From assembly GCF_006345805.1 (NCBI RefSeq), contig NC_043008.1, positions 50,220,001 to 50,284,000 of the forward strand: a stretch of DNA of 64,000 nucleotides, given 5' to 3'. Source of the stretch: Octopus sinensis. Taxonomy: Eukaryota. Position 1 is the stretch's first letter. Each line of letters begins with the position of its first letter. The notes below the pieces were generated by a model, which made no database searches, was not told the origin of the DNA, and saw nothing but the letters and a program-made list of their open reading frames with translations. Of this stretch, positions 1-64,000 are shown one piece after another. The position numbers and the translations under genes are program-made.

Positions 1-237
1 TGTGTTTAGCCCCTTGTGGGTAGTAAAGAAATAGGCATTTAGTCCATCTTAGCATTCCAAGTTCAGATTCCACCAAGGTCGACTGCCTTTCAGAGTCAGT
101 GAAGTAAATACTAGTGAAACACTGGGGTCAACTTTATCAACTTGTCCCCTAAAATTTCAGGCCTTGTGCCAAAATTTGAAATTATTATTATTACTACTAT
201 TATTATCTCTAATCCTATTGTATGTTGTGTTTTCCAG

Positions 238-441
238 GTTGCTACCCAGCTTGCTGTCCTTATTGGTAAGATAGCTCGTATGGACTGCCCGAGGTATTGG
301 CCTGAGTTAATCCCCACACTGTTAATGGTTGTGCGTTGTAATGATAGACTGCTACAAGAACGTTCCCTCCTTGTGCTGCATCATGTCATTAAGTCGCTGG
401 CTTCAAAACGTCTCATGGCTGACCGCAAGCTCTTTGAAGAA
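238..441 (+). CDS. IPO11: Importin-11 internal exon (VATQLAVLIGKIARMDCPRYWPELIPTL...RKLFEE)
   Basis: ttttccag|GTT ... GAA|gtgagt; matches human IPO11 IATQIAVLIAKVARLDCPRQWPELIPTL as recalled; phase 0/0. Confidence 0.95.
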
Positions 442-1408
442 GTGAGTGTCTTCCTTCTTGTTTTTCCCACCTACTTTATATCATATAAGCCAAAGAGGGA
501 GAGCCTATTATCAGGCGTTCTGAAAAAATAAATTAATTCTTAGAAAATTGATATTTTCATCATCAGATGTGATATTACTTTTGCAGGGAATGCGAAAATT
601 AATCAGACATTTCCTCAGGGTGCAGAGGAATTACTGTTCTGTCGACCTGTTAGAAACAACAGTTAAATCCCTCTCTCAAATCACGACCTCATTAACTATG
701 TCTTGAAAACAAAAAACAAAATTTGGGGGAAACATTGGATAATGTGATCCTACATACATTATGCCTGAAATAAAGATACCAAGATATATGATATACATAC
801 TGTACATTAGATATAGTCTTGGGTGTGACTTTAAACTGAATCCAGTAGTGGGGCCCTGGTTTTGAAGGGTGTGGAACCACTTCTTAGCCACTAAGGTTCC
901 CAGGTCTACTCTGACCCAGAATAGCAGCACCTGTCAGGATCCCAGCTGCAGGTTAATTAACATGTTATGGAAGAAACTCTAAGCAAAAACTCTTACTGCC
1001 TTGTGAGTGTCTTGGGAAAGGAAATGGCTTAGGGAATCAGCCTTGACAGCAATAAAGAAGAAGAACCCTTTAGGCAATCTGATGCCCTCTTCGATATTCT
1101 TCAAGTAATTCCAGTAATTAAGTATTCTTCAAGTAATTAAGGCAAATTTGTTTATGAGAAGGCCACTCCAATGTAAAACCCACAACTTGCTGGTCACCAC
1201 AGCAGTCTTAGCCTACTGAGCCACTGTGGTCCAAACTCTATGCCTAAGGAGTATGAGTGAACAGAGTAGGTTGGCTATTGATACTACCATGTAGATCCCT
1301 CATTTCCTTGGGCTTCATTCAACCCTTTTTACATTAACCTGCCTGAGACTGCCCTGGTTCTATGATACAAACTTCCTGGTAACAAGGTTTAGTTACAAAA
1401 ATTCCCGA

Positions 1409-44520: not shown

Positions 44521-44989
44521 AATTCCCTTCGGAAAACAAATAATTTCTAATTGACCAAAATTGTTATATTTAGTATTGACTAAACATTTTCCAAAGACAG
44601 TAAATACTATGGAATTTTTAATAGACACAGGATTAGATTAGCTTTGTGTAATAACAAAAATCTAGCACAAATTATAGCAGCACACAACGCTCGTAATTTT
44701 CAAATGAACAATAGCAATATTAACCAGAATTATAATTATAGATCAATAAATAACAACAATGTCAATATGAGAGGACAAGCTGTAAGTAACACATCTAGGT
44801 ATCAACCAATGAAATTGAAGAGACCCAAGGGAACTCCACAACCTGGAAGTAGAAGATGTGAATCCTAAAAAGCAAAGTACTCAGAATGTTGTCTGTGGAA
44901 AGGACTAATAACTTAGAAGATAGACAGGAGAATATAGAAATCACATCTAGAGTAGGTGACATAGATACTAGTGATAGAAGTAGTAGAAC

Positions 44990-45400
44990 TATTAAATGCG
45001 ATTGTGCAAGGAACAGGGTTTGTTTGCTTAACTCTAAATGTAGGCATAAAAATATCGTATACAGATGTAAGATTACCACAGAGAATAGAGAGTATTTCTA
45101 TATAGGAGCTAGCTCATGTTATATTAAGCAGATACTTGCCAATCGTTTAAGTTTGTTTAGAAATAGAGACAAAGTAAATACAAGTCTTAGTAAGTTAATT
45201 TGGACACTAAAAGCTAGTAATGAAGAATTTTTTTATTGCTTGGGAAATAATTGGTAAAGCAAAATCTTATAGAATAGACGATAATAATTGTGACCCTTGT
45301 GTGGAAGAAATGTACCAAATTTTCATGTCTAAGTTTACTCTTATAAACACTAGACTGGAACAGCTATGAAATGTTCACACTGGATAAAATGTACGTCTAA
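44990..45400 (+). mobile_element. Penelope-like GIY-YIG endonuclease relic
   Basis: CDC...C.L...C...IVY...YIG...TSLSKLIW.LK...C..C.EE...C.H. Confidence 0.8.
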
Positions 45401-53757: not shown

Positions 53758-53845
53758 ATGTCTAAGACAATCATTAAGGTCCCGCTGTGGTATTTTTACT
53801 ATATATTTTGTATCTTCCTTGGATCACAATTTGAAGGACTGGAAG
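53758..53845 (+). CDS. Cys-loop (nAChR-like) receptor subunit exon 1, signal peptide MSKTIIKVPLWYFYYIFCIFLGSQFEGLE
   Basis: ATG, basic N-region and hydrophobic core; GAAG|gtaag phase-1 donor fits the phase-1 acceptor of exon 2 (G|CC = Ala). Confidence 0.75.
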
Positions 53846-56317
53846 GTAAGACAAAGCATTTTTCATCCTCTTCTCCTTTCTCTCCTGCCTTTCATTTATT
53901 CTACCCATCACCAATACAAGTCACTTTTAAAAAAATTTTGAGAGCCTCTATATAACCATATAAGGCAATGGGTAAAGACCTCCTTTGGTCATGAATGATC
54001 ATGGGATTGCACCTAGAAAGTTACCCTCTGAGGCACAAGTTCGGATAAGGTTGTTTATGGAAGACCAGTAGTCGCCCATGCATATCAGCTTCCCCTCTTC
54101 ACACCACCAATGTTATCCAAGGGAAAGGCAAAGGGGCCGATACAGCTTGGCACCAGTGACGTTGCAACTCATTTCTACAGCTGAGTGAACAGGAGCAACG
54201 TGAAATAAAGCGTCTTGCTCAAGAACACAACACACAGTCCGGCCCGGGAATCGAACTTACTACCTCATGATTGTGAGTCCGATGCTTTAACCACTGAGCC
54301 ATGTACCACAACCAACAGTCAACTAGAAATAAACCCAAACAAGTCTTAACTTACATGCTACAGTCTTAAAAATAGAAGGACGTTTTTCCCTAATCCCTCA
54401 TTTGCTACAACCATCACCAATAACAGCCCCTTTTTAAAAAGTCATTGCAAGAGCCTCTGTATAGCCCCTGTATAGCTGTATAGCTTACATGCTGTGTCCC
54501 TTAATTTACATGCTGCAATCTTAAAAACAGAAAGACATTTTGACTAATATAATCTAAGATACAAGATGTAAAAAAGATTAAAAAACAAAACAAAATGTAC
54601 TTTATATTACATATGCCATGTCATGTTCTGAGTTCAAATTCAATTGAGGTCTTTTTGCTTTTTATTCTTCTGGGGTTGATTAAATAAGTATTGGCTGAGT
54701 ACTGGGGTTCATGTAACCAACTCAATCTCTCACTCAAAATTATTGGCGTTGTACCAAAATTTGAAGCCAATACTACATATACCATGTTTGACGAAACGGT
54801 TAAGAAATTTCTTACACTATCATGCAGTCTGGGTTTCAATCCTGCTGCATAGCATCTTAGACAAGTGTGATTTTCTGCAACCTTGAGTTCCCAATGGCTT
54901 CAGTGCGAAATTGGGTAACTGAAAACTGAAAGGAAGCTTCTTGGATGGGTTGTACTTTTAATCTAAAGGCTTGTTCCTGTCAGACAGTGAGATGTTGATG
55001 CAGCATGAGAATTGCATTAAGAGTACACATGTATGAGGAGTACTCAGCCACTTGCATACCAGTCCAACATGACTGAAAATTCAATTGACTTAACAACCAA
55101 ATTACTAACAACTGAACATTCATAGCCAGAAATTATGATTGAAATCTATTATATGTATACATATACATACATACATACATACATACATACATACATACAA
55201 AAATACATACATACATATATATATGTATACATATATATATGTGTGTGTATATATATATATATACTCTTTACTCTTTTACTTGTTTCAGTCATTTGACTGC
55301 AGCCATGCTGGAGCACCTCCTCCAGTCGAGCAAATCGACCCCGGAACTTATTCTTTGTAAGTCCAGTACTTATTCTATCGGTCTCTTTTTGCCGAACCGC
55401 TAAATATATATAACGGGAAAGTTTACGAAAATAAACAAAAGATGAAGGCAGGTGGAGTACAAACAAACAAATGTATTAGTATAGCGCTCAGGAATAGAAA
55501 TAGAAAAAGTCTTTTATGTTTCGAGCCTACGCTCTTCAACAGAAAGATACACAGAAAAAAACAAGGAGAGAAACAAGGAGAGAAAAAAATGCGTGTAGGA
55601 GCTAACAATCTATCATGATGGCTGTCCACTTGTGACCGAGGAAGACCATTACTGACCTTTAGGAACATTGTGCACTGCAGGGACTAACTTATATTTTGCA
55701 TTTGAGCTTCTTATTGATGGCTAATGAGCCCCACTCTTGACAAGTATACACAACTGCAAACACTGAAAACCAAGCTTTCCCCCATTCACTACACCAGTAG
55801 TACAGTTTTGAGCAGCACACTTAGATTCTTCATGCAGAATACATGCTCTCTCAAAAGTGTCGACCCCCCCTCCTTAACCTGCTTCCTCCATCTGTATGCA
55901 TGTATGTATGCATGTATGTATGTATGTATGTATGTATGTATATAAGGCATGTGCCATTAGTAATTACTCAGAGTAGGCAGTTGGTGACATTTATGTAGTA
56001 GGCACACAAAAAAATAAGTGAAACACAGGCGCATGACTGAATTGTAGGCAGATATATACATAGTGTATTAAAAAAACGTTGTTGTAGGAATGTACGCACC
56101 ATGTGTACTACAGCAGTTCTATGCGTAGTTTTAATACTGAGATTGAACGGCAGGGGCAAATTATGCCTACCTAAATCTACAGAAAAATTAAATATTTTGC
56201 ATTTTATGCAAAGTAATGAGAATAACCTTCATAATTTTATTGAATTAGGTGCATATTTTGCCATAAAAGGAAAATATTACTATCAGGGTAGGCACTGCCT
56301 ACCTTGCCAGGCAGTCC

Positions 56318-56357
<40 letters not shown>

Positions 56358-56359
<2 letters not shown>

Positions 56360-56698
56360 GCACCTTGGGCAAGTGTCTTCTACTATAGCCTCGGGCCGAC
56401 CAAAGCCTTGTGAGTGGATTTGGTAGATGGAAACTGAAAGAAGCCCGTCATATATATGTATATATATATATATGCGTGTGTGTGTTTGTGTGTCTGTGTT
56501 TGTCCCCTAGCATTGTTTGACAACCGATGCTGGTGTGTTTACGTCCCCGTCACTTAGCGGTTCGGCAAAAGAGACAGACAGAATAAGTACTGGGCTTACA
56601 AAAGAATAAGTCCCGGGGTCGATTTGCTCGACTAAAAAGGCGGTGCTCCAGCATGGCCGCAGTCAAATGACTGAAACAAGTAAAAGAGTAAAAGAGTA
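56358..56698 (+). mobile_element. SINE family A, 5'-truncated, low divergence
   Basis: intact CpGs (gcctcgggccgacc, ggggtcgatttgctcgac) and a tail ending taaaagagtaaaagag. Confidence 0.8.
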
Positions 56699-57464
56699 AA
56701 TATATATATATATATATATGTATGTATATATAGTATATGATGAAGAAGAAAATGGAGAGTTTTAATAGAGAACTATCAATTTATTAACATTTTGTCAATT
56801 TACACTTGCCGACAATTGTTTCCATATTTTCTCTCATTCAAATTACAAATTTATAAACTAAAATTGCATTTTTTGAAAAATTGCAAAGTCAATATTTCTC
56901 CAGGGGAAAAAAATTGACATAAACAGAAATTACACCTTAATTGATTGAGTGCTACTCAACAATTGATTGAGTGCTACTCAACAGACTAAACATTTCATCA
57001 TTCATATATTTATGACTCTGTGTGTGTTAATATATTTAAAACAAAAGAAACCATTATATGTGTATGTGTTTTTTGTTTGCATTTTTGTGTGCGTGTGTGT
57101 GTGTGTTAACATGTTTGAAACAAAGGAAGTGTTAAATTTGCATATATATTATTTTTCTATTATGGTTAACACTAAGTAAGTCTATTTCTGTCTTTTAATT
57201 CATATTATTAATGGTGAGAACATGAAAAGATAATATAATTTATATTAATCAATTAAATTATCTTATAAGTTAATAATTTGTAATTGTTGGTGCTAAGGGT
57301 TACTTTATAATTTTATTACCAAATAAAACTGGTATAGGATTAAACCAGAGAAGCTTGGATGTAAAGATCCCTTTAAAGAGGAATCTATATCCTCACAATA
57401 ACACCCCCCCCCCTCACACATATATATACATACATGTATGTATATGTGTATATATATAATATAC

Positions 57465-57506
<42 letters not shown>

Positions 57507-57613
57507 GCATATATATGTATGTATATGTGCATATATATCTATGTATGTATATGTATATGTGTATGTATATATATATATATATATATATTATCAGGGAGAG
57601 AGAATTATAATGT

Positions 57614-57652
<39 letters not shown>

Positions 57653-58116
57653 TAAAGTAGAGATAAAACCACTATTAGGCAAATCAAACAGTGAAAAACA
57701 TAAATCAAAACATAAAAATAAAAATAATTAATATAATATACAAAATATATAAAAAATTTAAAATTTAAATTATTTAAATTTAAAATTATTAATTTATATT
57801 CATAAATTTTTATATTTTTTAAAATATTTTAAAAATTTAAATTAATATTTTTTTTAATTTTTAAACTTTTTTAAAATATATATAAGTATCAAAAAGTATT
57901 AAAAAGTTTAATATAAGATAATAAGTAAAACCACTACGTATGTTTCATGGCCTTAACCTAATTTGAATTACAATAATTTAAATTCAATTAAAATTTGAAT
58001 TATGGTTATAGTCAATCTTCAGGTTAATGATAATAGTTAAATAAATAAGCAAAAATAATATTTTTAAGAAATAAATAAAATAATAATTTTAATAAAATAA
58101 TATATGCATATATATA

Positions 58117-58177
<61 letters not shown>

Positions 58178-59087
58178 TGTGTGTGTGTGTGTGTGTGTGT
58201 GCGTGTGTGTGTGTGAATATATATATATACACTAGCACTGACCACTTCCCAGCCCCACATCCACACACCTACACATACACACACGCACATGTCAAGGTCA
58301 CCAGCCCTCTTCCACACACACATACATACTCGCTTATACACATGCACAGCACCTTTGTTTTGGGATCACCACTACTTTATTATCTTCCCTTCTTCCTAGC
58401 TCTCCTGTGTGACCCCTCTGTCCAGCACTCACCAGTTTTTTATTCTTGACTCATTGTAATCTAGACCTCTTGTATGCATTGCAATCAGTGAAACTTTGGA
58501 CCTTTTGTGGGGAGAACAAGAGACATTGCCTTGATGTGGAAATTTAATTTAACAAATACATTAAATACAACTAGAAAACGAGAAAGAACTTTGCACTAAA
58601 AGGGAGGTTAACATACTAGTATTACTACTACTACCACCACCCACAACCACAACCACTACCACCACCACTACTACAACTACCACTAGCACCATCACCACCC
58701 ACCACCACCACCATTTCTACTACTACCACCACCATCACAACCACTACTACTACTACTACCAACACCAACACCACAACCACCCACCTACTACTACTACTAC
58801 ACCACCACCCACAACCACCACCACCATCACTACTACTACTACCACTACCACCACCTCCACCACAACCACTACTACTACTACTACCACCACCACCACCACC
58901 ACCACTGTTTGTGTGTGTGCATCATTATCTATTACATGTGTGTCCTTGTCGATGCACAACCAATTGTGTGCATATATTCATTAAAAGAATCTCAGACAGA
59001 GAGACAGACTTTGGAATGTCTCACAAATTCTCAGTGCCACAAGGAGATTGGATTTGGAGAATCCACGTCAGCTTCTTTTGCTTTTAT

Positions 59088-59288
59088 ATGTATGTATGTG
59101 TGCATGTGTGTATGTATGTATGTATGTATGTGTGTATGTGTGTATGTATGTATGTATGTTTGTATGTATGTATGCATGTATGTATGTGTGTATGTATGTG
59201 TGTGTATGTATGTATGTATGTATGTATGTATGTATGTATGTGTGTGTATGTATGTATGTATGTATGTATGTATGTGTGTATGCATGTA

Positions 59289-59324
<36 letters not shown>

Positions 59325-59328
59325 TGTA

Positions 59329-59361
<33 letters not shown>

Positions 59362-59468
59362 ATGTATGTATATATATATGTATGTGTGTATGTATGTATG
59401 TATGTATGTATGTATGTGTGTATGTATGTATGTGTGTATGTATGTATGTATGTGTGTATGTATGTATG
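59088..59468. repeat. (TATG)n/(TG)n compound microsatellite
   Basis: direct inspection; source of the MYVC-rich ORFs. Confidence 0.95.
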
Positions 59469-59856
59469 CTCATAACGTAAAGCGCCATGCAATTCTGGAG
59501 TGGTAACAATTCTGGAAGTTCGCTGCCTTAATGATAATAACGATGATAATCCTTTCTACAAAAAACACAAGGCCTGAAGTCTGAGGGGCTGCTGTTAGTG
59601 AATAACATCGACCCCAGTGTTTCACTGGTACTTATTTTATCGACCCCGAAAGGATGAAAGGCAAAGTCAACCTCAGTAGCAATTGAACTCAGAGTGTCAA
59701 GGCACCTGAAATGCTGCTCAGTTGCCCTAATGACAATGATAGAAATGGCATCAACCATTTGTCCCAAATCCACAATTCCAATTTCACTCTTCCATGTTGT
59801 AGTGTGACGGATGAAGAGGACAACAGAAAAAGAGAAGGAAATACAATGGGCCTTAC

Positions 59857-60040
59857 CTCAGCGAAGATTCAGATCTCTCTCAGCAAAGTCAATGCCTCTA
59901 GTCGCTTCGTCGTCTTGGCTCGAACTGCCCCACTTCGTTGATCCCACACGTGCGAGCTGCCTTGCCGCTTCCGCTTCCTGCCACGCATGCGCCCTGCAAG
60001 CCCTACTTCCGCCCTCCCTTATCTGTCGTCCTCTCCACTG
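59857..60040 (-). promoter_or_regulatory. CpG-rich TATA-less promoter and probable first exon of a minus-strand transcript
   Basis: CACGTG 59947-59952; tandem ETS GGAAGCGGAAGC 59967-59978 (-); NRF1-like ACGCATGCGC 59983-59992; GGGCGGAAGT 60005-60014 (-); donor GAG|GTAAGG at 59857/59856. Confidence 0.6.
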
Positions 60041-60140
60041 ACACCACACATGTCACAAATTTTTAAAATATATCAATGTTTTCCTGTTTCACTTAAAACT
60101 CATTGAATTTGTTTCTCCTTTTTATTTCTTCAACTTACAG

Positions 60141-60280
60141 CCATCACAAAACTTCAAAAAGCTCGCTTAGCACTAAAAAAACACATCTTCACTAACTACC
60201 AATATTTTCTCCGGCCTCACTGTGGCAATTCCCCGGTCAACATAACCCTAAATTTGGCACTGAGACAGATCATTGATTTG
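60141..60280 (+). CDS. Cys-loop (nAChR-like) receptor exon 2 (...LKKHIFTNYQYFLRPHCGNSPVNITLNLALRQIIDL)
   Basis: cttacag|CC ... TTG|gtaacg; exactly 140 nt as in alpha7-type nAChR exon 2; Y..RP and V.l.L.L.QIID motifs. Confidence 0.9.
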
Positions 60281-61040
60281 GTAACGTATTCAAAAATATT
60301 TCATTTTCATTCATGACTTTTCAGCCCCTAAATATTTTCAATTTATATCCAGTCTCTTTGAAATACTAATTTTAACTAGTTTTGGCACAAGGCCACAGAT
60401 TTATAGCCTGGAACATTGTCGATTTGTTCCATTCACTAGTATATTATTGGTAGCTACTTTTTTGATGGTCCTTGGGAAAGATTTGATCTAAAAAAAAAAC
60501 TAGGGGTGGAAATGAAACGAAAGTATGGGAAAGTAATTTTAGTATTCTTTTACCATTCTACCACAACATTCAGTCAAGTCTCAATTAATTGTCCACCACA
60601 ACAGTCAAGTGGGGGTCATTGCCAGTGCTGTCGGACTGGCTCCTGTGCAGGTGGCACGTAAAAAACACCATTTGAGCGTGGTTGTTGCCAGTATCACCTT
60701 ACTGGCTTTCGTGCTGGTGGCATGTAAAAGCACCTACTACACTCTCAGAGAGGTTGGCATGAGGAAGGGCATCCAGCTGTAGAAACTCTGCCAGATCAGA
60801 TTGGAGCCTGGTGCAGCCTTCTGGCTTGAAAGTCCTCGGTCAAACCGTCCAACCCATGCCAGCATGGAAAGTGGACGTTAAACAACGATGATGATGATGA
60901 TGAAGGAATATATTTCTAACAATGAAATATATATATGCACTTATGAATATATATATATGTATGTACATGTATGTGCATACATACATGTGTGTGTATGCAC
61001 ATGTTGTATGTATGTGTGTGTATATGTGTGTATATATATA

Positions 61041-61417
61041 TACTAGCAGTATCGCTCGGCGTTGTTCAGGTCTGTTTCGACCCTTTAGAATTGGAATCTT
61101 TGAAAAGTAAAAATTTTGCATTATGTAGCTTGTTATTCTCTTTAAGTGAACATTTTTCTGGTTGAAATACACCGAAAAATGGCGACACAGCAATCAAAAA
61201 ATTGTAAAAAATAAGGGATTTCCATAGAAAAAAGCACTTTTTTGATGTAAGTAATTTTTGGTGTTAACATGGTCCAATTTGAATTTTTTCTTCAACGGAA
61301 GGAAGAACAAGCCTTCTTCTATCATACTTACAATTTTGGTCAACTTGTGCCGCAGGGTCTCGGAGGAGATAATGTTAATTGAAGGCTACCAAACCTGCCA
61401 TACACAGACAACTTCAG

Positions 61418-61421
<4 letters not shown>
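61041..61421 (+). mobile_element. Possible non-autonomous Helitron/HINE-like element
   Basis: starts tactagcagtatcgctcggcgttg inside a TA run and ends cagctttatata; family assignment is from resemblance only. Confidence 0.35.
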
Positions 61422-61451
<30 letters not shown>

Positions 61452-61715
61452 TCACACACATGTGTGTGCACATGCACGCATTACACAAACACATTAACTG
61501 CTGGAATGCCTTGAATGATACCTAATGGTTTTCATGATCATAAATCTCAAATTATCGTTTATAAGTACCACTGTGACAATATAGAAACAAAAATATTCTA
61601 TAGTAGAATATATAGTAGAAGACACATGCCCAAGGTGCCACGCAGTGGGACTGAACCTGGAACCATGTGGTTGGTAAGCAAGCTACTTACCACACAGCCA
61701 CTCCTGTGCCTGGAA

Positions 61716-61755
<40 letters not shown>

Positions 61756-61883
61756 CACGAGGGCCTTCTATATAATTTCTGTGTATCAAATTCACTCAGA
61801 AGTCATTGATTGGCCCAAGACTATAATGGAAGACACCAGTCTGATGTGTCACGCAGTGAGACTGAACCCAAAACCATGTCATC

Positions 61884-61933
<50 letters not shown>

Positions 61934-62042
61934 AAGAAAGAAAGAAAGAGAGACAGAATCAAATAATTACCGAGATAGTAAACTATTTCTAATCTTTGTT
62001 TTTTCTTTTTTTTTTTTTTATTTTTCGTCCTAAAACTCATAG

Positions 62043-62087
62043 AATGATAGCCTACAAATCCTTCATACAAGCATCTGGATAAGAATG
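62043..62087 (+). CDS. Cys-loop receptor exon 3 (NDSLQILHTSIWIRM)
   Basis: tcatag|AAT ... ATG|gtatgt; exactly 45 nt; corresponds to DEKNQ.L.T..W..M (loop D Trp). Confidence 0.88.
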
Positions 62088-62784
62088 GTATGTAAGCATT
62101 AATCTTCATATCTCTGTAAATTGAAATAATGTCATTGATTCACATAATGTCACTCGCTGCAGATCTTGCTAGAAATGTCGCCATGCACACATACAGCACC
62201 AAATCACACTCAACAAACCTCCTAAACACACACAGGCTTCATGTTCATCAAGGCTCACATACAGAATAGCGCAAGGCCCACACTCAGTGCAACACAAAGC
62301 CAACACATAATACAGCGCAAAGCTCACACACAACACAAGGCCAACATACAACGGTTATGACGAAGAGTGTTTCAGTTGATCCGATCAATGGAACAGCCTG
62401 CTGGTGAAATTAATGTGCAAGTGGCTGAGCACTCCACAGATACATGTAACCCTTAACGTAGTTCTCAGGGAGATTCAGCATGACACAGAGTGTAACAAAG
62501 CTGGCCCTTTGAAATACAGATACAACTCATTTTTGCCAGCTGAGTGGACGGGGGCAATGTGAAATAAGGTGTTTTGCTCAAAGGCACAATGTGCTGCTGA
62601 AAATCGAACTCTCAACCTTGCAATCATGAGCTGAATCCCCTAGCCACTAAGTCACACGCCTTCAACCCAAATACAACTCAGCACAATACAAAGCCCACAC
62701 AGAATGTAATTTAGGACTCACACAGAACACAAAACAAGGCTGATGTACAACACAACACAAGGATCATGATTACTCAATGTAAAA

Positions 62785-63215
62785 CCCTCTCACAACACAG
62801 CACAAGCCCTTTCACAACACAGTGCAAGTCTCTCTCACAACACAGCACAACACCCTTTCACAACACAGCACAACACCCTCTCACAACACAGCACAAGGCC
62901 CTCTCACAACACAGTGCAAGTCCCTCTCACAACACAGCACAAATCCCTCTCACAACACAGCACAAGACCTTCTCACAACACAGCACAAGACCATCGCACA
63001 GCACAGCACAAGATCCTCTCACAATACAGCACATGTCCCTCTCACAACACAGCACAAGACCATCACACAGCACAGCACAACACCCTCTCACAATACAGCA
63101 CATGTCCCTCTCACAACACAGAACAAGTCCCTCACACAACACAGCACAAGGCCCTCTTACAACACAGCACAAATGCCTCTCACAACACTGCACAAGACCC
63201 TCTCACAACACCATC
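62785..63215. repeat. ~22-bp minisatellite (CACAACACAGCACAAGNCCCTCT)n
   Basis: roughly 20 imperfect tandem units in receptor intron 3. Confidence 0.9.
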
Positions 63216-63392
63216 TCACAACACAATTCAAAACACACACACACAATAATTCTCATAACACTTACAAGGTCTAAAGATAACAACCGACACAATAACACAA
63301 AACTCAAACACTACACTCCCACAACACGGCTGTTCAGATCCATTCTAGTTGTGACAGAAATGTAAAGGGACTTTGTTTCTGTATTGCTGTAG

Positions 63393-63502
63393 CAATGGAA
63401 TGATTGTAGACTGAGCTGGAATAAGACCGATTTTGAAGACATCGACCAAATACTTGTGTCTAACAAAGAGGTTTGGATTCCTGATATTGCGCTCTACGAG
63501 AA
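63393..63502 (+). CDS. Cys-loop receptor exon 4 (QWNDCRLSWNKTDFEDIDQILVSNKEVWIPDIALYE-); the gene continues past the window
   Basis: ctgtag|CAA ... AA|gtaagt; exactly 110 nt; W.D..L.W and W.PDI.LY motifs. Confidence 0.93.
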
Positions 63503-63519
63503 GTAAGTAATCCTCTGTT

Positions 63520-63734
63520 TTAACCCTTTAGCATTTAACCCAGTCGTATCTGACCAAAATATTCTGTTTTGTGTTCAAACTGGCCAGATCTGACCTTTCA
63601 CACCAACCATACAATATCGTTCAAAAATAAATATTTATATCATCGAAATCCTGAAGCTATGAGATACTGTATTAAAAGAATGGGAATAAATAAACGTTAC
63701 ATTTGATAGAGTCACCTGAATGTTGGAAAGTTAA
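63520..63734. mobile_element. TTAA-flanked MITE (ttaaccctttagcatt family)
   Basis: begins 17 nt into receptor intron 4; related copies near 12340-12520, 26590-26800 and 35900-36100. Confidence 0.55.
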
Positions 63735-64000
63735 ACATGTAGGCAATGCTATTTGAAACAGGTTTGTTCGGTCGCAAAATATTAGCTGGGAGTCAACTAC
63801 AGTTATCTCCCCTGTTGAATGTTCTAGAACATTCCAAGCAACAGAGTTTAGCTCTCCCCCTTTGCTTGCATACAAGGTGTAACTGCTAAACCACACACAG
63901 GAGGGCGTTAGAAGTAATATTGCCTACTTAAGAGCGAATTCCAATTGAATTGCTCTCTTCTTCTGTAAGACATGATGAGGTCAACATCAGAGAGAGAGAG

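What the first reader, a model, noticed from the sequence alone, without database searches (positions are those of the whole stretch)
53758..63502. Divergent nAChR-like Cys-loop receptor with an extra extracellular Cys pair
Seen: four exons splice in frame to MSKTIIKVPLWYFYYIFCIFLGSQFEGLEA-ITKLQKARLALKKHIFTNYQYFLRPHCGNSPVNITLNLALRQIIDL-NDSLQILHTSIWIRM-QWNDCRLSWNKTDFEDIDQILVSNKEVWIPDIALYE. The exon sizes 140/45/110 are the ancestral alpha7-type layout. Unusual features: Cys in RPHC and in WNDC, the beta1-beta2 loop DEKNQ changed to NDSLQ, and three N-glycosylation sequons (NIT, NDS, NKT). The loop D Trp and loop A Tyr are retained. Known: cephalopods have expanded atypical AChR-like families, including sucker chemotactile receptors. 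Inference: the two Cys occupy neighbouring positions of the fold and may form a new disulfide; the gene may belong to an atypical, possibly non-ACh-gated lineage. Loops B and C lie outside the window.
Basis: partly seen in the sequence, partly recalled or inferred. Interest (0 to 1): 0.75.

Follow-up and report, generated by a model that had tools for sequence, protein, structure and literature searches.

The report
Octopus non-alpha nicotinic receptor subunit gene
The four exons are real and form the start of an already annotated Octopus sinensis nicotinic-receptor-family gene; its "extra" cysteine pair is shared by a whole clade of molluscan receptors, and the gene is an ordinary uncharacterised subunit that has lost the acetylcholine-binding loop C motif.

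Summary
Window 53758-63502 (+) holds exons 1-4 (88/140/45/110 nt, all AG/GT, in frame) of a Cys-loop receptor gene. The window is Octopus sinensis chromosome CM016870.1 (20,243/20,243 bases identical). The gene is RefSeq XP_036363852.1, "neuronal acetylcholine receptor subunit alpha-10-like", 493 aa in 7 exons. Exons 5-7 lie 1.9-7.3 kb beyond the window end.

Orthologues exist in O. vulgaris, O. bimaculoides (92%) and Argonauta (66%). dN/dS is 0.28, with no nonsynonymous change in TM1-TM3.

The Cys pair (C57, C96) is not a peculiarity of this gene. It marks a large lophotrochozoan "alpha9/10-like" clade: 54 relatives have both, 121 neither, and only one lineage truly has one. A disulfide is likely but I could not test it geometrically.

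The recovered downstream exon shows an intact Cys-loop, loop B Trp and cation-type M2. Loop C lacks the vicinal Cys pair and both tyrosines, so this is a non-alpha subunit despite its name.

It is not a chemotactile receptor. Those are described as intronless, and no such chain appears among the top sequence or fold matches, which are all canonical nAChRs.

Most likely it is an accessory or complementary subunit of a heteromeric cation channel. Interest is low to moderate.

The parts
53758..53845 (+). Exon 1 (88 nt): start codon and signal peptide MSKTIIKVPLWYFYYIFCIFLGSQFEGLE + first base of Ala30; GT donor at 53846
   Evidence: Identical to L002 10001-10088, the start of the CDS of XP_036363852.1.
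60141..60280 (+). Exon 2 (140 nt): N-terminal helix, RPHC loop with Cys57 (60221-60223), N63-I-T sequon, beta1 strand
   Evidence: There are 3 synonymous and 0 nonsynonymous differences from O. vulgaris.
62043..62087 (+). Exon 3 (45 nt): beta1-beta2 loop NDSLQ (N77-D-S sequon) and beta2 strand with loop D Trp88 (62076-62078)
63393..63502 (+). Exon 4 (110 nt): WNDC with Cys96 (63405-63407), N101-K-T sequon, loop A WIPDIALYE with Tyr126 (63495-63497). It ends in phase 2 and continues into exon 5 beyond the window.
   Evidence: Exon 5 starts at window-equivalent 65931.
53846..60140 (+). Intron 1 (6295 nt), rich in microsatellites and SINE-like repeats
60281..62042 (+). Intron 2 (1762 nt)
62088..63392 (+). 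Intron 3 (1305 nt), containing an 18.6-copy 23-bp minisatellite at 62785-63211
63503..64000 (+). Start of intron 4. The rest of the gene lies outside the window: exon 5 at 65931-66463, exon 6 at 68812-69038 and exon 7 at 71007-71345 in window-equivalent coordinates.
   Evidence: L002 continues the same chromosome past the window end

Best explanation
The region is the 5' part (exons 1-4 of 7) of a functional Octopus sinensis gene for a subunit of a cation-selective pentameric ligand-gated channel of the nicotinic family. RefSeq names it 'neuronal acetylcholine receptor subunit alpha-10-like' (XP_036363852.1).

It belongs to a lophotrochozoan clade whose members carry a third pair of extracellular cysteines. 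One sits in the loop before strand beta1 (RPxC) and one just after strand beta2 (WxDC). They most probably form a disulfide that staples the pre-beta1 loop to the beta2-beta3 loop at the top of the ligand-binding domain.

Within that clade, this gene is the octopod sister of an alpha-type paralogue. It has lost the principal-face loop C elements: the vicinal Cys pair is deleted, Tyr188 is replaced by His and Tyr195 by Ser. It keeps the Cys-loop, loop A Tyr, loop B Trp, loop D Trp, the gating loops and a GEK-type M2.

It therefore most likely works as a non-alpha (accessory or complementary-face) subunit. It would co-assemble with alpha-type partners into heteromeric ACh-gated cation channels, as vertebrate beta or alpha5/beta3-type subunits do, rather than binding agonist on its own principal face.

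Shown here: gene structure, identity, orthology, selective constraint, residue states and clade membership. Inferred: the disulfide, the cation selectivity, and the accessory role with heteromeric assembly.
For: - Exons and frame.
- Species and locus: the window is 100% identical to O. sinensis CM016870.1 over 20,243 nt.
- Gene model: my 7-exon model translates exactly to XP_036363852.1.
- Family: Pfam Neur_chan_LBD 3.9e-51 and Neur_chan_memb 3.6e-36.
- Orthologues: O. bimaculoides 92% full length, Argonauta 66%, O. vulgaris locus intact, and a further octopod fragment at 74%.
- Constraint: NG86 dN/dS against O. bimaculoides is 0.28 overall and 0.22 in the ECD. TM1-TM3 has 0 nonsynonymous against 7 synonymous changes, and the ICD is at 0.73.
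- Residues against human alpha7: Y93=Y, W149=W, W55=W, Cys-loop intact, Y188->H, C190/C191 deleted, Y195->S, M2 PSSGEKVSIGVTVLLSLSVF.
- Cys pair: 54 relatives have both, 121 neither, 4 only the second and 0 only the first. Three of the four exceptions are not real exceptions: one is a mis-modelled protein, and P0150 has its Cys shifted by two residues (RPSPC). That leaves one lineage with a single Cys.
- Cys count: the query's mature ECD has exactly four Cys (57, 96, 162, 176), and 40 of 44 clade ECDs have 4 or 6 Cys.
- Tree: it groups with its orthologues in 300/300 replicates and with the alpha-type Octopus paralogue in 269/300. It falls inside the Cys-pair assemblage, excluding human alpha7 and beta2, in 282/300.
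- Fold: the AF2 model of the orthologue is confident in the ECD and TMD, and its 50 best PDB neighbours are canonical nAChR chains.
Against: - No expression or functional data were available.
- The Cys-Cys distance could not be measured, because model coordinates are not exposed by the tools. No solved structure among the top profile hits carries the pair, so the disulfide has no structural precedent.
- Much of the covariation could be phylogenetic. Column 57 also covaries almost as strongly with other clade-marker columns.
- Loop E positions on the complementary face are Arg143, Tyr151 and Arg153, against Leu, Gln and Leu in alpha7. Two arginines would be unfavourable for a cationic agonist. 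So the subunit may not contribute a normal complementary ACh site either, which leaves room for a purely structural role or another ligand.
- The tree is neighbour-joining on 308 columns, not maximum likelihood. Exact recovery of the inclusive Cys-pair clade occurred in only 91/300 replicates.
Confidence: 0.55

Rival explanations
1. It is a receptor subunit of a non-cholinergic, possibly chemosensory channel. Having lost the ACh-coordinating loop C and acquired arginines in loop E, it would form homomeric or heteromeric channels gated by another small molecule. This would parallel the chemotactile receptors, the betaine receptor ACR-23 or the orphan Alpo4.
For: - Loop C lacks the CC pair and both Tyr in all octopod orthologues.
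- Loop E has Arg143 and Arg153.
- The gene appears restricted to octopods in the databases searched; no squid or cuttlefish orthologue was found.
- Cephalopods have known neofunctionalised nAChR-like chemoreceptors (PMC11526382, PMC13174522).
- ECD dN/dS of 0.22 shows that the domain is constrained for some function.
Against: - It has 7 exons with the ancestral layout, whereas CRs are reported intronless (PMC13174522, PMC11526382).
- It is a single-copy gene with 1:1 orthologues rather than a tandem expansion. There is no other nAChR-like sequence in the window, and the paralogue lies 18 Mb away.
- The best sequence and fold matches are canonical nAChRs, and no CR chain is in the top lists.
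- Low dN/dS in the ECD contrasts with the diversifying selection reported for CR pockets (10.1101/2025.10.28.685082).
- Loss of loop C cysteines is typical of ordinary beta-type subunits.
Confidence: 0.27
2. It is a decaying duplicate: a non-functional remnant of an alpha-type gene whose binding loop has degenerated.
For: Loop C is degenerate. The O. vulgaris database model is truncated to 314 aa and lacks about 150 aa.
Against: - The truncation is an annotation error. The O. vulgaris locus holds the full exon 5 and an intact 493-aa frame.
- Intact ORFs with conserved splice sites are present in O. sinensis, O. vulgaris and O. bimaculoides, and Argonauta has a partial (407-aa) gene model that covers exon 4 through TM4.
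- dN/dS is 0.28, with no nonsynonymous change in TM1-TM3.
- The same CC-less loop C state is conserved between Octopus and Argonauta.
Confidence: 0.03
3. The two extra cysteines do not bond to each other. They are free thiols, form inter-subunit bridges, or pair with other residues.
For: No coordinates could be inspected. No solved pLGIC among the top profile hits has the pair. In the AF2 secondary-structure string, C57 lies 5 residues before beta1 and C96 lies 2 residues after beta2, so they are not in direct hairpin register.
Against: - The two positions co-occur almost perfectly, and two embedded lineages (P0034, P0105) have lost both together.
- They are the only ECD cysteines besides the Cys-loop pair, and clade members have even Cys counts in 40 of 44 cases.
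- Unpaired cysteines are rare in extracellular domains (general knowledge).
Confidence: 0.15

Closest known systems
RefSeq XP_036363852.1 / XP_036363853.1, 'neuronal acetylcholine receptor subunit alpha-10-like' isoforms X1/X2, Octopus sinensis. Orthologues: XP_014786697.1/XP_014786698.1 (O. bimaculoides) and GAB1606007.1 (Argonauta hians).
   Same: It is the same gene. The window's 127 aa equal residues 1-127 of XP_036363852.1, and my 7-exon model reproduces the 493-aa protein exactly.
   Different: Nothing differs in sequence. The automatic name 'alpha-10-like' is misleading, because the protein lacks the loop C vicinal cysteines that define alpha subunits.
Molluscan/lophotrochozoan 'alpha7/9/10-like' nAChR expansion (PMC6896357; probably the Alpha-A10a/b clades of PMC13174522)
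   Same: It shares the RPxC...WxDC cysteine pair, the ALRQ motif, a GEK-type M2 and 33-51% identity with these proteins. It nests within this assemblage in the tree.
   Different: Most members keep a canonical YxCCPEPYPD loop C, and this gene does not. It is intron-rich, whereas many expanded bivalve members are intronless (PMC6896357). I could not verify assignment to the named clades of PMC13174522.
Vertebrate non-alpha and accessory nAChR subunits (beta2, beta4, beta3, alpha5)
   Same: They share the lack of loop C vicinal Cys and of the principal-face tyrosines, together with retention of the Cys-loop, the loop D Trp and a cationic M2. Human beta2 is the single best PDB sequence match, at 9.8e-67.
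   Different: They are not orthologous. The octopus gene arose from an alpha-type ancestor within a lophotrochozoan clade. It carries the extra Cys pair and has Arg at two loop E positions.
Cephalopod chemotactile receptors (CRT1, CRB1 and relatives)
   Same: Both are nAChR-derived cephalopod pLGIC subunits that lack canonical ACh-binding residues.
   Different: CRs are reported as intronless retrogenes in expanded arrays with diversifying pockets (PMC13174522, PMC11526382, 10.1101/2025.10.28.685082). This gene has 7 exons, is single-copy with 1:1 orthologues, and has an ECD dN/dS of 0.22. No CR chain appears among the best 60 sequence or 50 fold matches. I could not obtain CR sequences for a direct tree.
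Octopus paralogue XP_029643728.2 / XP_014778949.1 ('alpha-10')
   Same: It is the closest paralogue (47% identity over the shared part; 269/300 bootstrap). It has the same Cys pair and the same 140/45/110 exons, and lies on the same chromosome.
   Different: The paralogue keeps the YSCC loop C, so it is alpha-type. It lies about 18 Mb away and has an extra intron within the exon-5 equivalent.

Membership tests
Cys-loop pentameric ligand-gated ion channel (Pfam Neur_chan_LBD + Neur_chan_memb) | Extracellular ligand-binding domain followed by four transmembrane helices | tested here: met
   PF02931 at 3.9e-51 (residues 41-242) and PF02932 at 3.6e-36 (250-486) on the full protein. The window part alone gives PF02931 at 9.3e-24. 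The AF2 model has a beta-sandwich plus TM helices.
Cys-loop pentameric ligand-gated ion channel | Signature Cys-x13-Cys loop with an FPFD core | tested here: met
   C162-MLQTKNFPFDKQF-C176 in exon 5, which lies outside the window and was read from the same chromosome in L002.
Nicotinic acetylcholine receptor family (cationic) | Closest similarity to nAChR subunits, and a GEK-type M2 with a 9' Leu | tested here: met
   The best PDB matches are beta2, alpha7 and alpha4 at 1e-66 to 1e-62. The 50 best Foldseek matches are all nAChR chains. The M2 sequence is PSSGEKVSIGVTVLLSLSVF. Ion selectivity itself was not measured.
nAChR alpha-type subunit (as the RefSeq name implies) | Vicinal Cys-Cys at the tip of loop C (YxCC) | tested here: not met
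   Loop C reads VKHSSGVSSELIY. It is 2 residues shorter than in alpha7, the CC pair is absent, and Y188->H and Y195->S. The same state is found in O. bimaculoides, Argonauta and fragment P0198.
Lophotrochozoan Cys-pair ('alpha9/10-like') nAChR clade | Paired cysteines at RPxC (pre-beta1) and WxDC (post-beta2) | tested here: met
   C57 and C96 are present. The pair occurs in 54 related ECDs from bivalves, gastropods, octopods and an annelid.
Lophotrochozoan Cys-pair ('alpha9/10-like') nAChR clade | Phylogenetic nesting within the clade | tested here: met
   In the NJ tree it groups with the Cys-pair paralogue P0014 in 269/300 replicates, and within the Cys-pair assemblage excluding human alpha7 and beta2 in 282/300. 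Exact recovery of the inclusive clade was only 91/300.
Lophotrochozoan Cys-pair clade | The two cysteines form an intramolecular disulfide | not testable with these tools
   Model coordinates are not exposed. There is only indirect support from covariation, joint losses and even Cys counts.
Cephalopod chemotactile receptors (CR) | Intronless retrogene structure | tested here: not met
   The gene has seven exons and six introns, conserved in three Octopus genomes. The intronless state of CRs is taken from PMC13174522 and PMC11526382.
Cephalopod chemotactile receptors (CR) | Sequence or phylogenetic membership of the CR clade | tested here: inconclusive
   No CR chain is among the best 60 PDB sequence matches or the best 50 fold matches. 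CR sequences could not be retrieved for a direct tree.
Cephalopod chemotactile receptors (CR) | Sucker sensory expression and gating by hydrophobic ligands | not testable with these tools
   No expression or electrophysiology data were accessible.

The most novel reading that the evidence does not exclude
The conserved C57-C96 pair forms a third extracellular disulfide that has not been seen in any solved pentameric channel. It would tie the pre-beta1 loop to the beta2-beta3 loop, the counterpart of the main immunogenic region, and would define a lophotrochozoan receptor clade. Within that clade, this octopod-restricted subunit has no functional principal face and an arginine-lined complementary face. 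On this reading it is not a silent accessory subunit, but part of a receptor for a non-cholinergic ligand that arose independently of the intronless chemotactile receptors.
Probability: 0.15. Interest if true: 0.55.

Novelty: new member of a known kind. Interest (0 to 1): 0.25.

Why it matters
The result mainly clarifies the finding. What looked like a uniquely divergent receptor is an annotated, conserved octopod gene from a well-known molluscan nAChR expansion.

Two small points may be useful to specialists:

1. The RPxC/WxDC cysteine pair is a clean sequence marker for a large lophotrochozoan nAChR clade. It probably reflects a third ECD disulfide, with no counterpart among the top-scoring solved structures I could inspect. 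I found no description of it in the literature that I could search.

2. Genes auto-named "alpha-10-like" in octopus include a subunit that is not alpha-type. The O. vulgaris database model of this gene is also mis-spliced. Both points matter for anyone counting or classifying cephalopod cholinergic and chemosensory receptors.

Tried and rejected
- **Word-indexed search with the 127-aa N-terminus:** it found nothing. The exhaustive HMMER search was needed instead.
- **Locus look-up of the O. bimaculoides isoform X2:** it failed because only the longest isoform is indexed. Isoform X1 worked.
- **Strict monophyly of all Cys-pair sequences:** it was recovered 0/100 times, because two lineages that lost both Cys and two truncated models are embedded in the clade. 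I replaced it with an inclusive or relaxed clade test.
- **Mutual information between columns 57 and 96:** this pair ranks first of 9,870 column pairs, but only just ahead of other clade-marker pairs. I therefore do not count it as independent proof of contact.
- **A solved structure with the same Cys pair:** a clade-profile search of the PDB showed none in the top alignments.
- **Cys-Cys distance:** it could not be measured, because structure prediction returns no coordinates.
- **Primary CR papers (PMC7605239, PMC10228259):** they are not held, and CR protein sequences could not be retrieved. The CR comparison therefore rests on gene structure, secondary literature and ranking in the PDB searches.
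- **Literature searches:** searches for a description of the extra disulfide and for expression of octopus alpha-10-like subunits returned nothing relevant.
- **Pseudogene hypothesis:** rejected by dN/dS and by intact ORFs.
- **Tandem-array hypothesis:** rejected. There is no other nAChR-like sequence in the window, and the paralogue lies 18 Mb away.

Full report
**1. Observation.** Reading the window and translating it confirms four + strand exons.

| Exon | Window coordinates | Length |
|---|---|---|
| 1 | 53758-53845 | 88 nt |
| 2 | 60141-60280 | 140 nt |
| 3 | 62043-62087 | 45 nt |
| 4 | 63393-63502 | 110 nt |

The ATG is at 53758, with an in-frame stop upstream. Every intron starts with GT and ends with AG. 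This fragment alone matches Pfam Neur_chan_LBD at E=9e-24 and nAChR ectodomains in the PDB at about 1e-17.

Cys57 (60221-60223), Cys96 (63405-63407), Trp88, Tyr126, the NDSLQ loop and the three sequons (N63, N77, N101) are all as described.

**2. Identity of the locus.** The word-indexed protein search found nothing. The exhaustive search found a 314-aa protein, P0001, that is 96% identical over exons 3-4. Its locus (L001, O. vulgaris chromosome OX597825.1) matches the window tail at 89-99.7% identity.

A second locus is identical to window 43758-64000 over 20,243 bases with no mismatch. This is L002, Octopus sinensis chromosome CM016870.1, assembly GCA_006345805.1. The window is therefore O. 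sinensis, and L002 continues the same molecule beyond the window end.

The gene has seven exons (88/140/45/110/533/227/339 nt). Exons 5-7 lie at window-equivalent 65931-66463, 68812-69038 and 71007-71345. My splice model translates exactly to RefSeq XP_036363852.1, 'neuronal acetylcholine receptor subunit alpha-10-like isoform X1', 493 aa. The full protein carries both pLGIC Pfam domains.

Exon 5 encodes the following:
- an intact Cys-loop, C162-x13-C176, with an FPFD core;
- the loop B Trp183;
- TM1, and an M2 of the cationic GEK type (PSSGEKVSIGVTVLLSLSVF).

Loop C, however, reads VKHSSGVSSELIY. Compared with human alpha7 it is two residues shorter. It lacks the vicinal Cys190/Cys191, and has His for Tyr188 and Ser for Tyr195.

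On the complementary face the loop D Trp is kept, but the loop E positions are Arg143, Tyr151 and Arg153. The protein is thus a non-alpha subunit, whatever its automatic name says.

**4. Conservation and constraint.** The following orthologues were found.

| Species | Evidence |
|---|---|
| O. vulgaris | intact 493-aa frame; 5 synonymous and 2 nonsynonymous codon differences |
| O. bimaculoides | XP_014786697/8; 92% identity; same seven-exon layout |
| Argonauta hians | 66% identity |
| another octopod | partial fragment, 74% identity |

All share the CC-less loop C.

Nei-Gojobori dN/dS between O. sinensis and O. bimaculoides is 0.28 overall (dS 0.114) and 0.22 in the ectodomain. TM1-TM3 has 0 nonsynonymous against 7 synonymous changes, and the cytoplasmic loop is at 0.73. 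The gene is functional and constrained, not a decaying copy.

No squid or cuttlefish orthologue turned up in two searches. That is weak evidence that the gene is octopod-specific.

**5. The cysteine pair.** The nearest relatives, at 33-51% identity, are bivalve, gastropod, octopus and annelid proteins annotated alpha7/9/10-like. All of them show RPxC...WxDC.

Across 179 aligned ectodomains that cover both columns:

| Cysteine state | Count |
|---|---|
| both | 54 |
| neither | 121 |
| only the second | 4 |
| only the first | 0 |

Of the four exceptions, one is the mis-modelled P0001. P0150 has its Cys shifted by two residues (RPSPC). The other two are fragments from a single lineage. Two lineages nested in the clade (P0034, P0105) lack both cysteines.

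The query's mature ectodomain has exactly four cysteines: the pair and the Cys-loop. Forty of 44 clade ectodomains have 4 or 6. Together this makes a C57-C96 disulfide likely.

Three caveats apply:
- It is a clade trait, not a novelty of this gene.
- Much of the covariation is confounded by shared ancestry.

In the AF2 model of the orthologue (pLDDT 74.8; ECD and TMD mostly above 80), C57 sits in the coil five residues before beta1. C96 sits two residues after beta2, at the start of a short helix. A profile of the clade's N-terminal ectodomain did not pull out any solved structure with the pair.

**6. Phylogenetic position.** I built a neighbour-joining tree of 127 sequences on 308 columns.
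- The gene groups with its O. bimaculoides and Argonauta orthologues in 300/300 replicates.
- It then groups with an Octopus paralogue in 269/300. This paralogue is XP_029643728.2 / XP_014778949.1, and it retains a YSCC loop C.
- The group falls within the Cys-pair assemblage, to the exclusion of human alpha7 and beta2, in 282/300.

The paralogue lies about 18 Mb away on the same chromosome and has one more intron. The simplest history is a DNA-level duplication of an alpha-type gene, followed by loss of loop C function in this copy before Octopus and Argonauta diverged.

**7. Relation to chemotactile receptors.** CRs are described as intronless retrogenes in expanded arrays with rapidly diversifying pockets (PMC13174522, PMC11526382, 10.1101/2025.10.28.685082).

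This gene has six introns in the ancestral positions. It is single-copy with 1:1 orthologues and has a constrained ectodomain. It matches canonical nAChRs best both by sequence (beta2, alpha7 and alpha4 at about 1e-66) and by fold (top 50 all nAChR chains). No CR chain appears in any top list.

I could not obtain CR sequences or the primary papers. CR-clade membership is therefore rejected on gene structure and ranking, not on a direct tree.

**8. Mechanism.** The most likely reading (about 0.55) is that the protein is a non-alpha accessory or complementary subunit. It would join alpha-type partners in heteromeric, cation-selective, ACh-gated channels, and its gating elements (Cys-loop, beta1-beta2 loop, M2-M3 loop) are intact.

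The main rival (about 0.27) is a receptor for another ligand. The two loop E arginines and the apparent octopod restriction favour that reading. The gene structure, orthology pattern and purifying selection argue against it.

A pseudogene is excluded in practice. The disulfide is likely, with about 0.15 probability that the two cysteines do not pair with each other.

**9. Verdict.** The interpretation overstates uniqueness, because the Cys pair is a family-wide trait and the gene is already annotated. I rate it a new, uncharacterised member of a known kind, with low to moderate interest.

Noticed in passing
L001 10001-36735 (O. vulgaris OX597825.1), the orthologue of the window gene: The database protein for O. 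vulgaris ('alpha-10-like', 314 aa) is mis-spliced. It has a spurious first exon and uses an internal acceptor in exon 5, which drops about 150 aa (loops E, B, F and C, the Cys-loop and TM1). The locus actually encodes an intact 493-aa protein.
   Followed up: yes
window 62785-63211 (intron 3); 59087-59468 and 58633-58905 (intron 1): There is a 23-bp minisatellite (CCCTCTCACAACACAGCACAAGT, 18.6 copies) in intron 3, which creates long spurious ORFs. Intron 1 holds long (TATG)n (about 97 copies) and (ACC)n (about 90 copies) arrays.
   Followed up: partly
window 142-531 (+): This ORF has a conserved-looking helical-repeat peptide (…QLAVLIGKIARMDCPRYWPELIPTLL…SLASKRLMADRKLFEE). From memory it resembles an importin-11-type exon. 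Pfam gave no hit, so this remains unverified.
   Followed up: partly
window 44886-45257 (+): This is a 123-aa Cys-rich ORF with an IVYRCKI…YIG motif, reminiscent (from memory only) of nuclease modules of mobile elements. Pfam gave no hit.
   Followed up: partly
L004 (O. sinensis CM016870.1, 68.63-68.69 Mb): The closest paralogue (XP_029643728.2) is alpha-type with a YSCC loop C. It sits about 18 Mb from this gene on the same chromosome and spans more than 60 kb. It keeps an intron that this gene lacks within the exon-5 equivalent. Its RefSeq model (313 aa) ends after TM3 and is probably incomplete.
   Followed up: partly
L002 30027-37588 and L001 45679-46735 (downstream of the gene, minus strand): The downstream neighbour in both O. 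sinensis and O. vulgaris is a glycoside hydrolase family 9 (cellulase-type) gene, so local synteny is conserved.
   Followed up: no
L002 25273-25281 (window-equivalent 69030-69038), 3' end of exon 6: RefSeq isoform X2 (490 aa) differs from X1 by the absence of Val-Asn-Gln. This fits an alternative GT donor 9 nt upstream (…AGA|GTGAACCAG|gtaatt). The same two isoforms are annotated in O. bimaculoides.
   Followed up: partly
window 54130-54300 and 62500-62660: The introns contain tRNA-like, SINE-like segments in opposite orientations. ARAGORN calls no tRNA gene anywhere in the window.
   Followed up: partly
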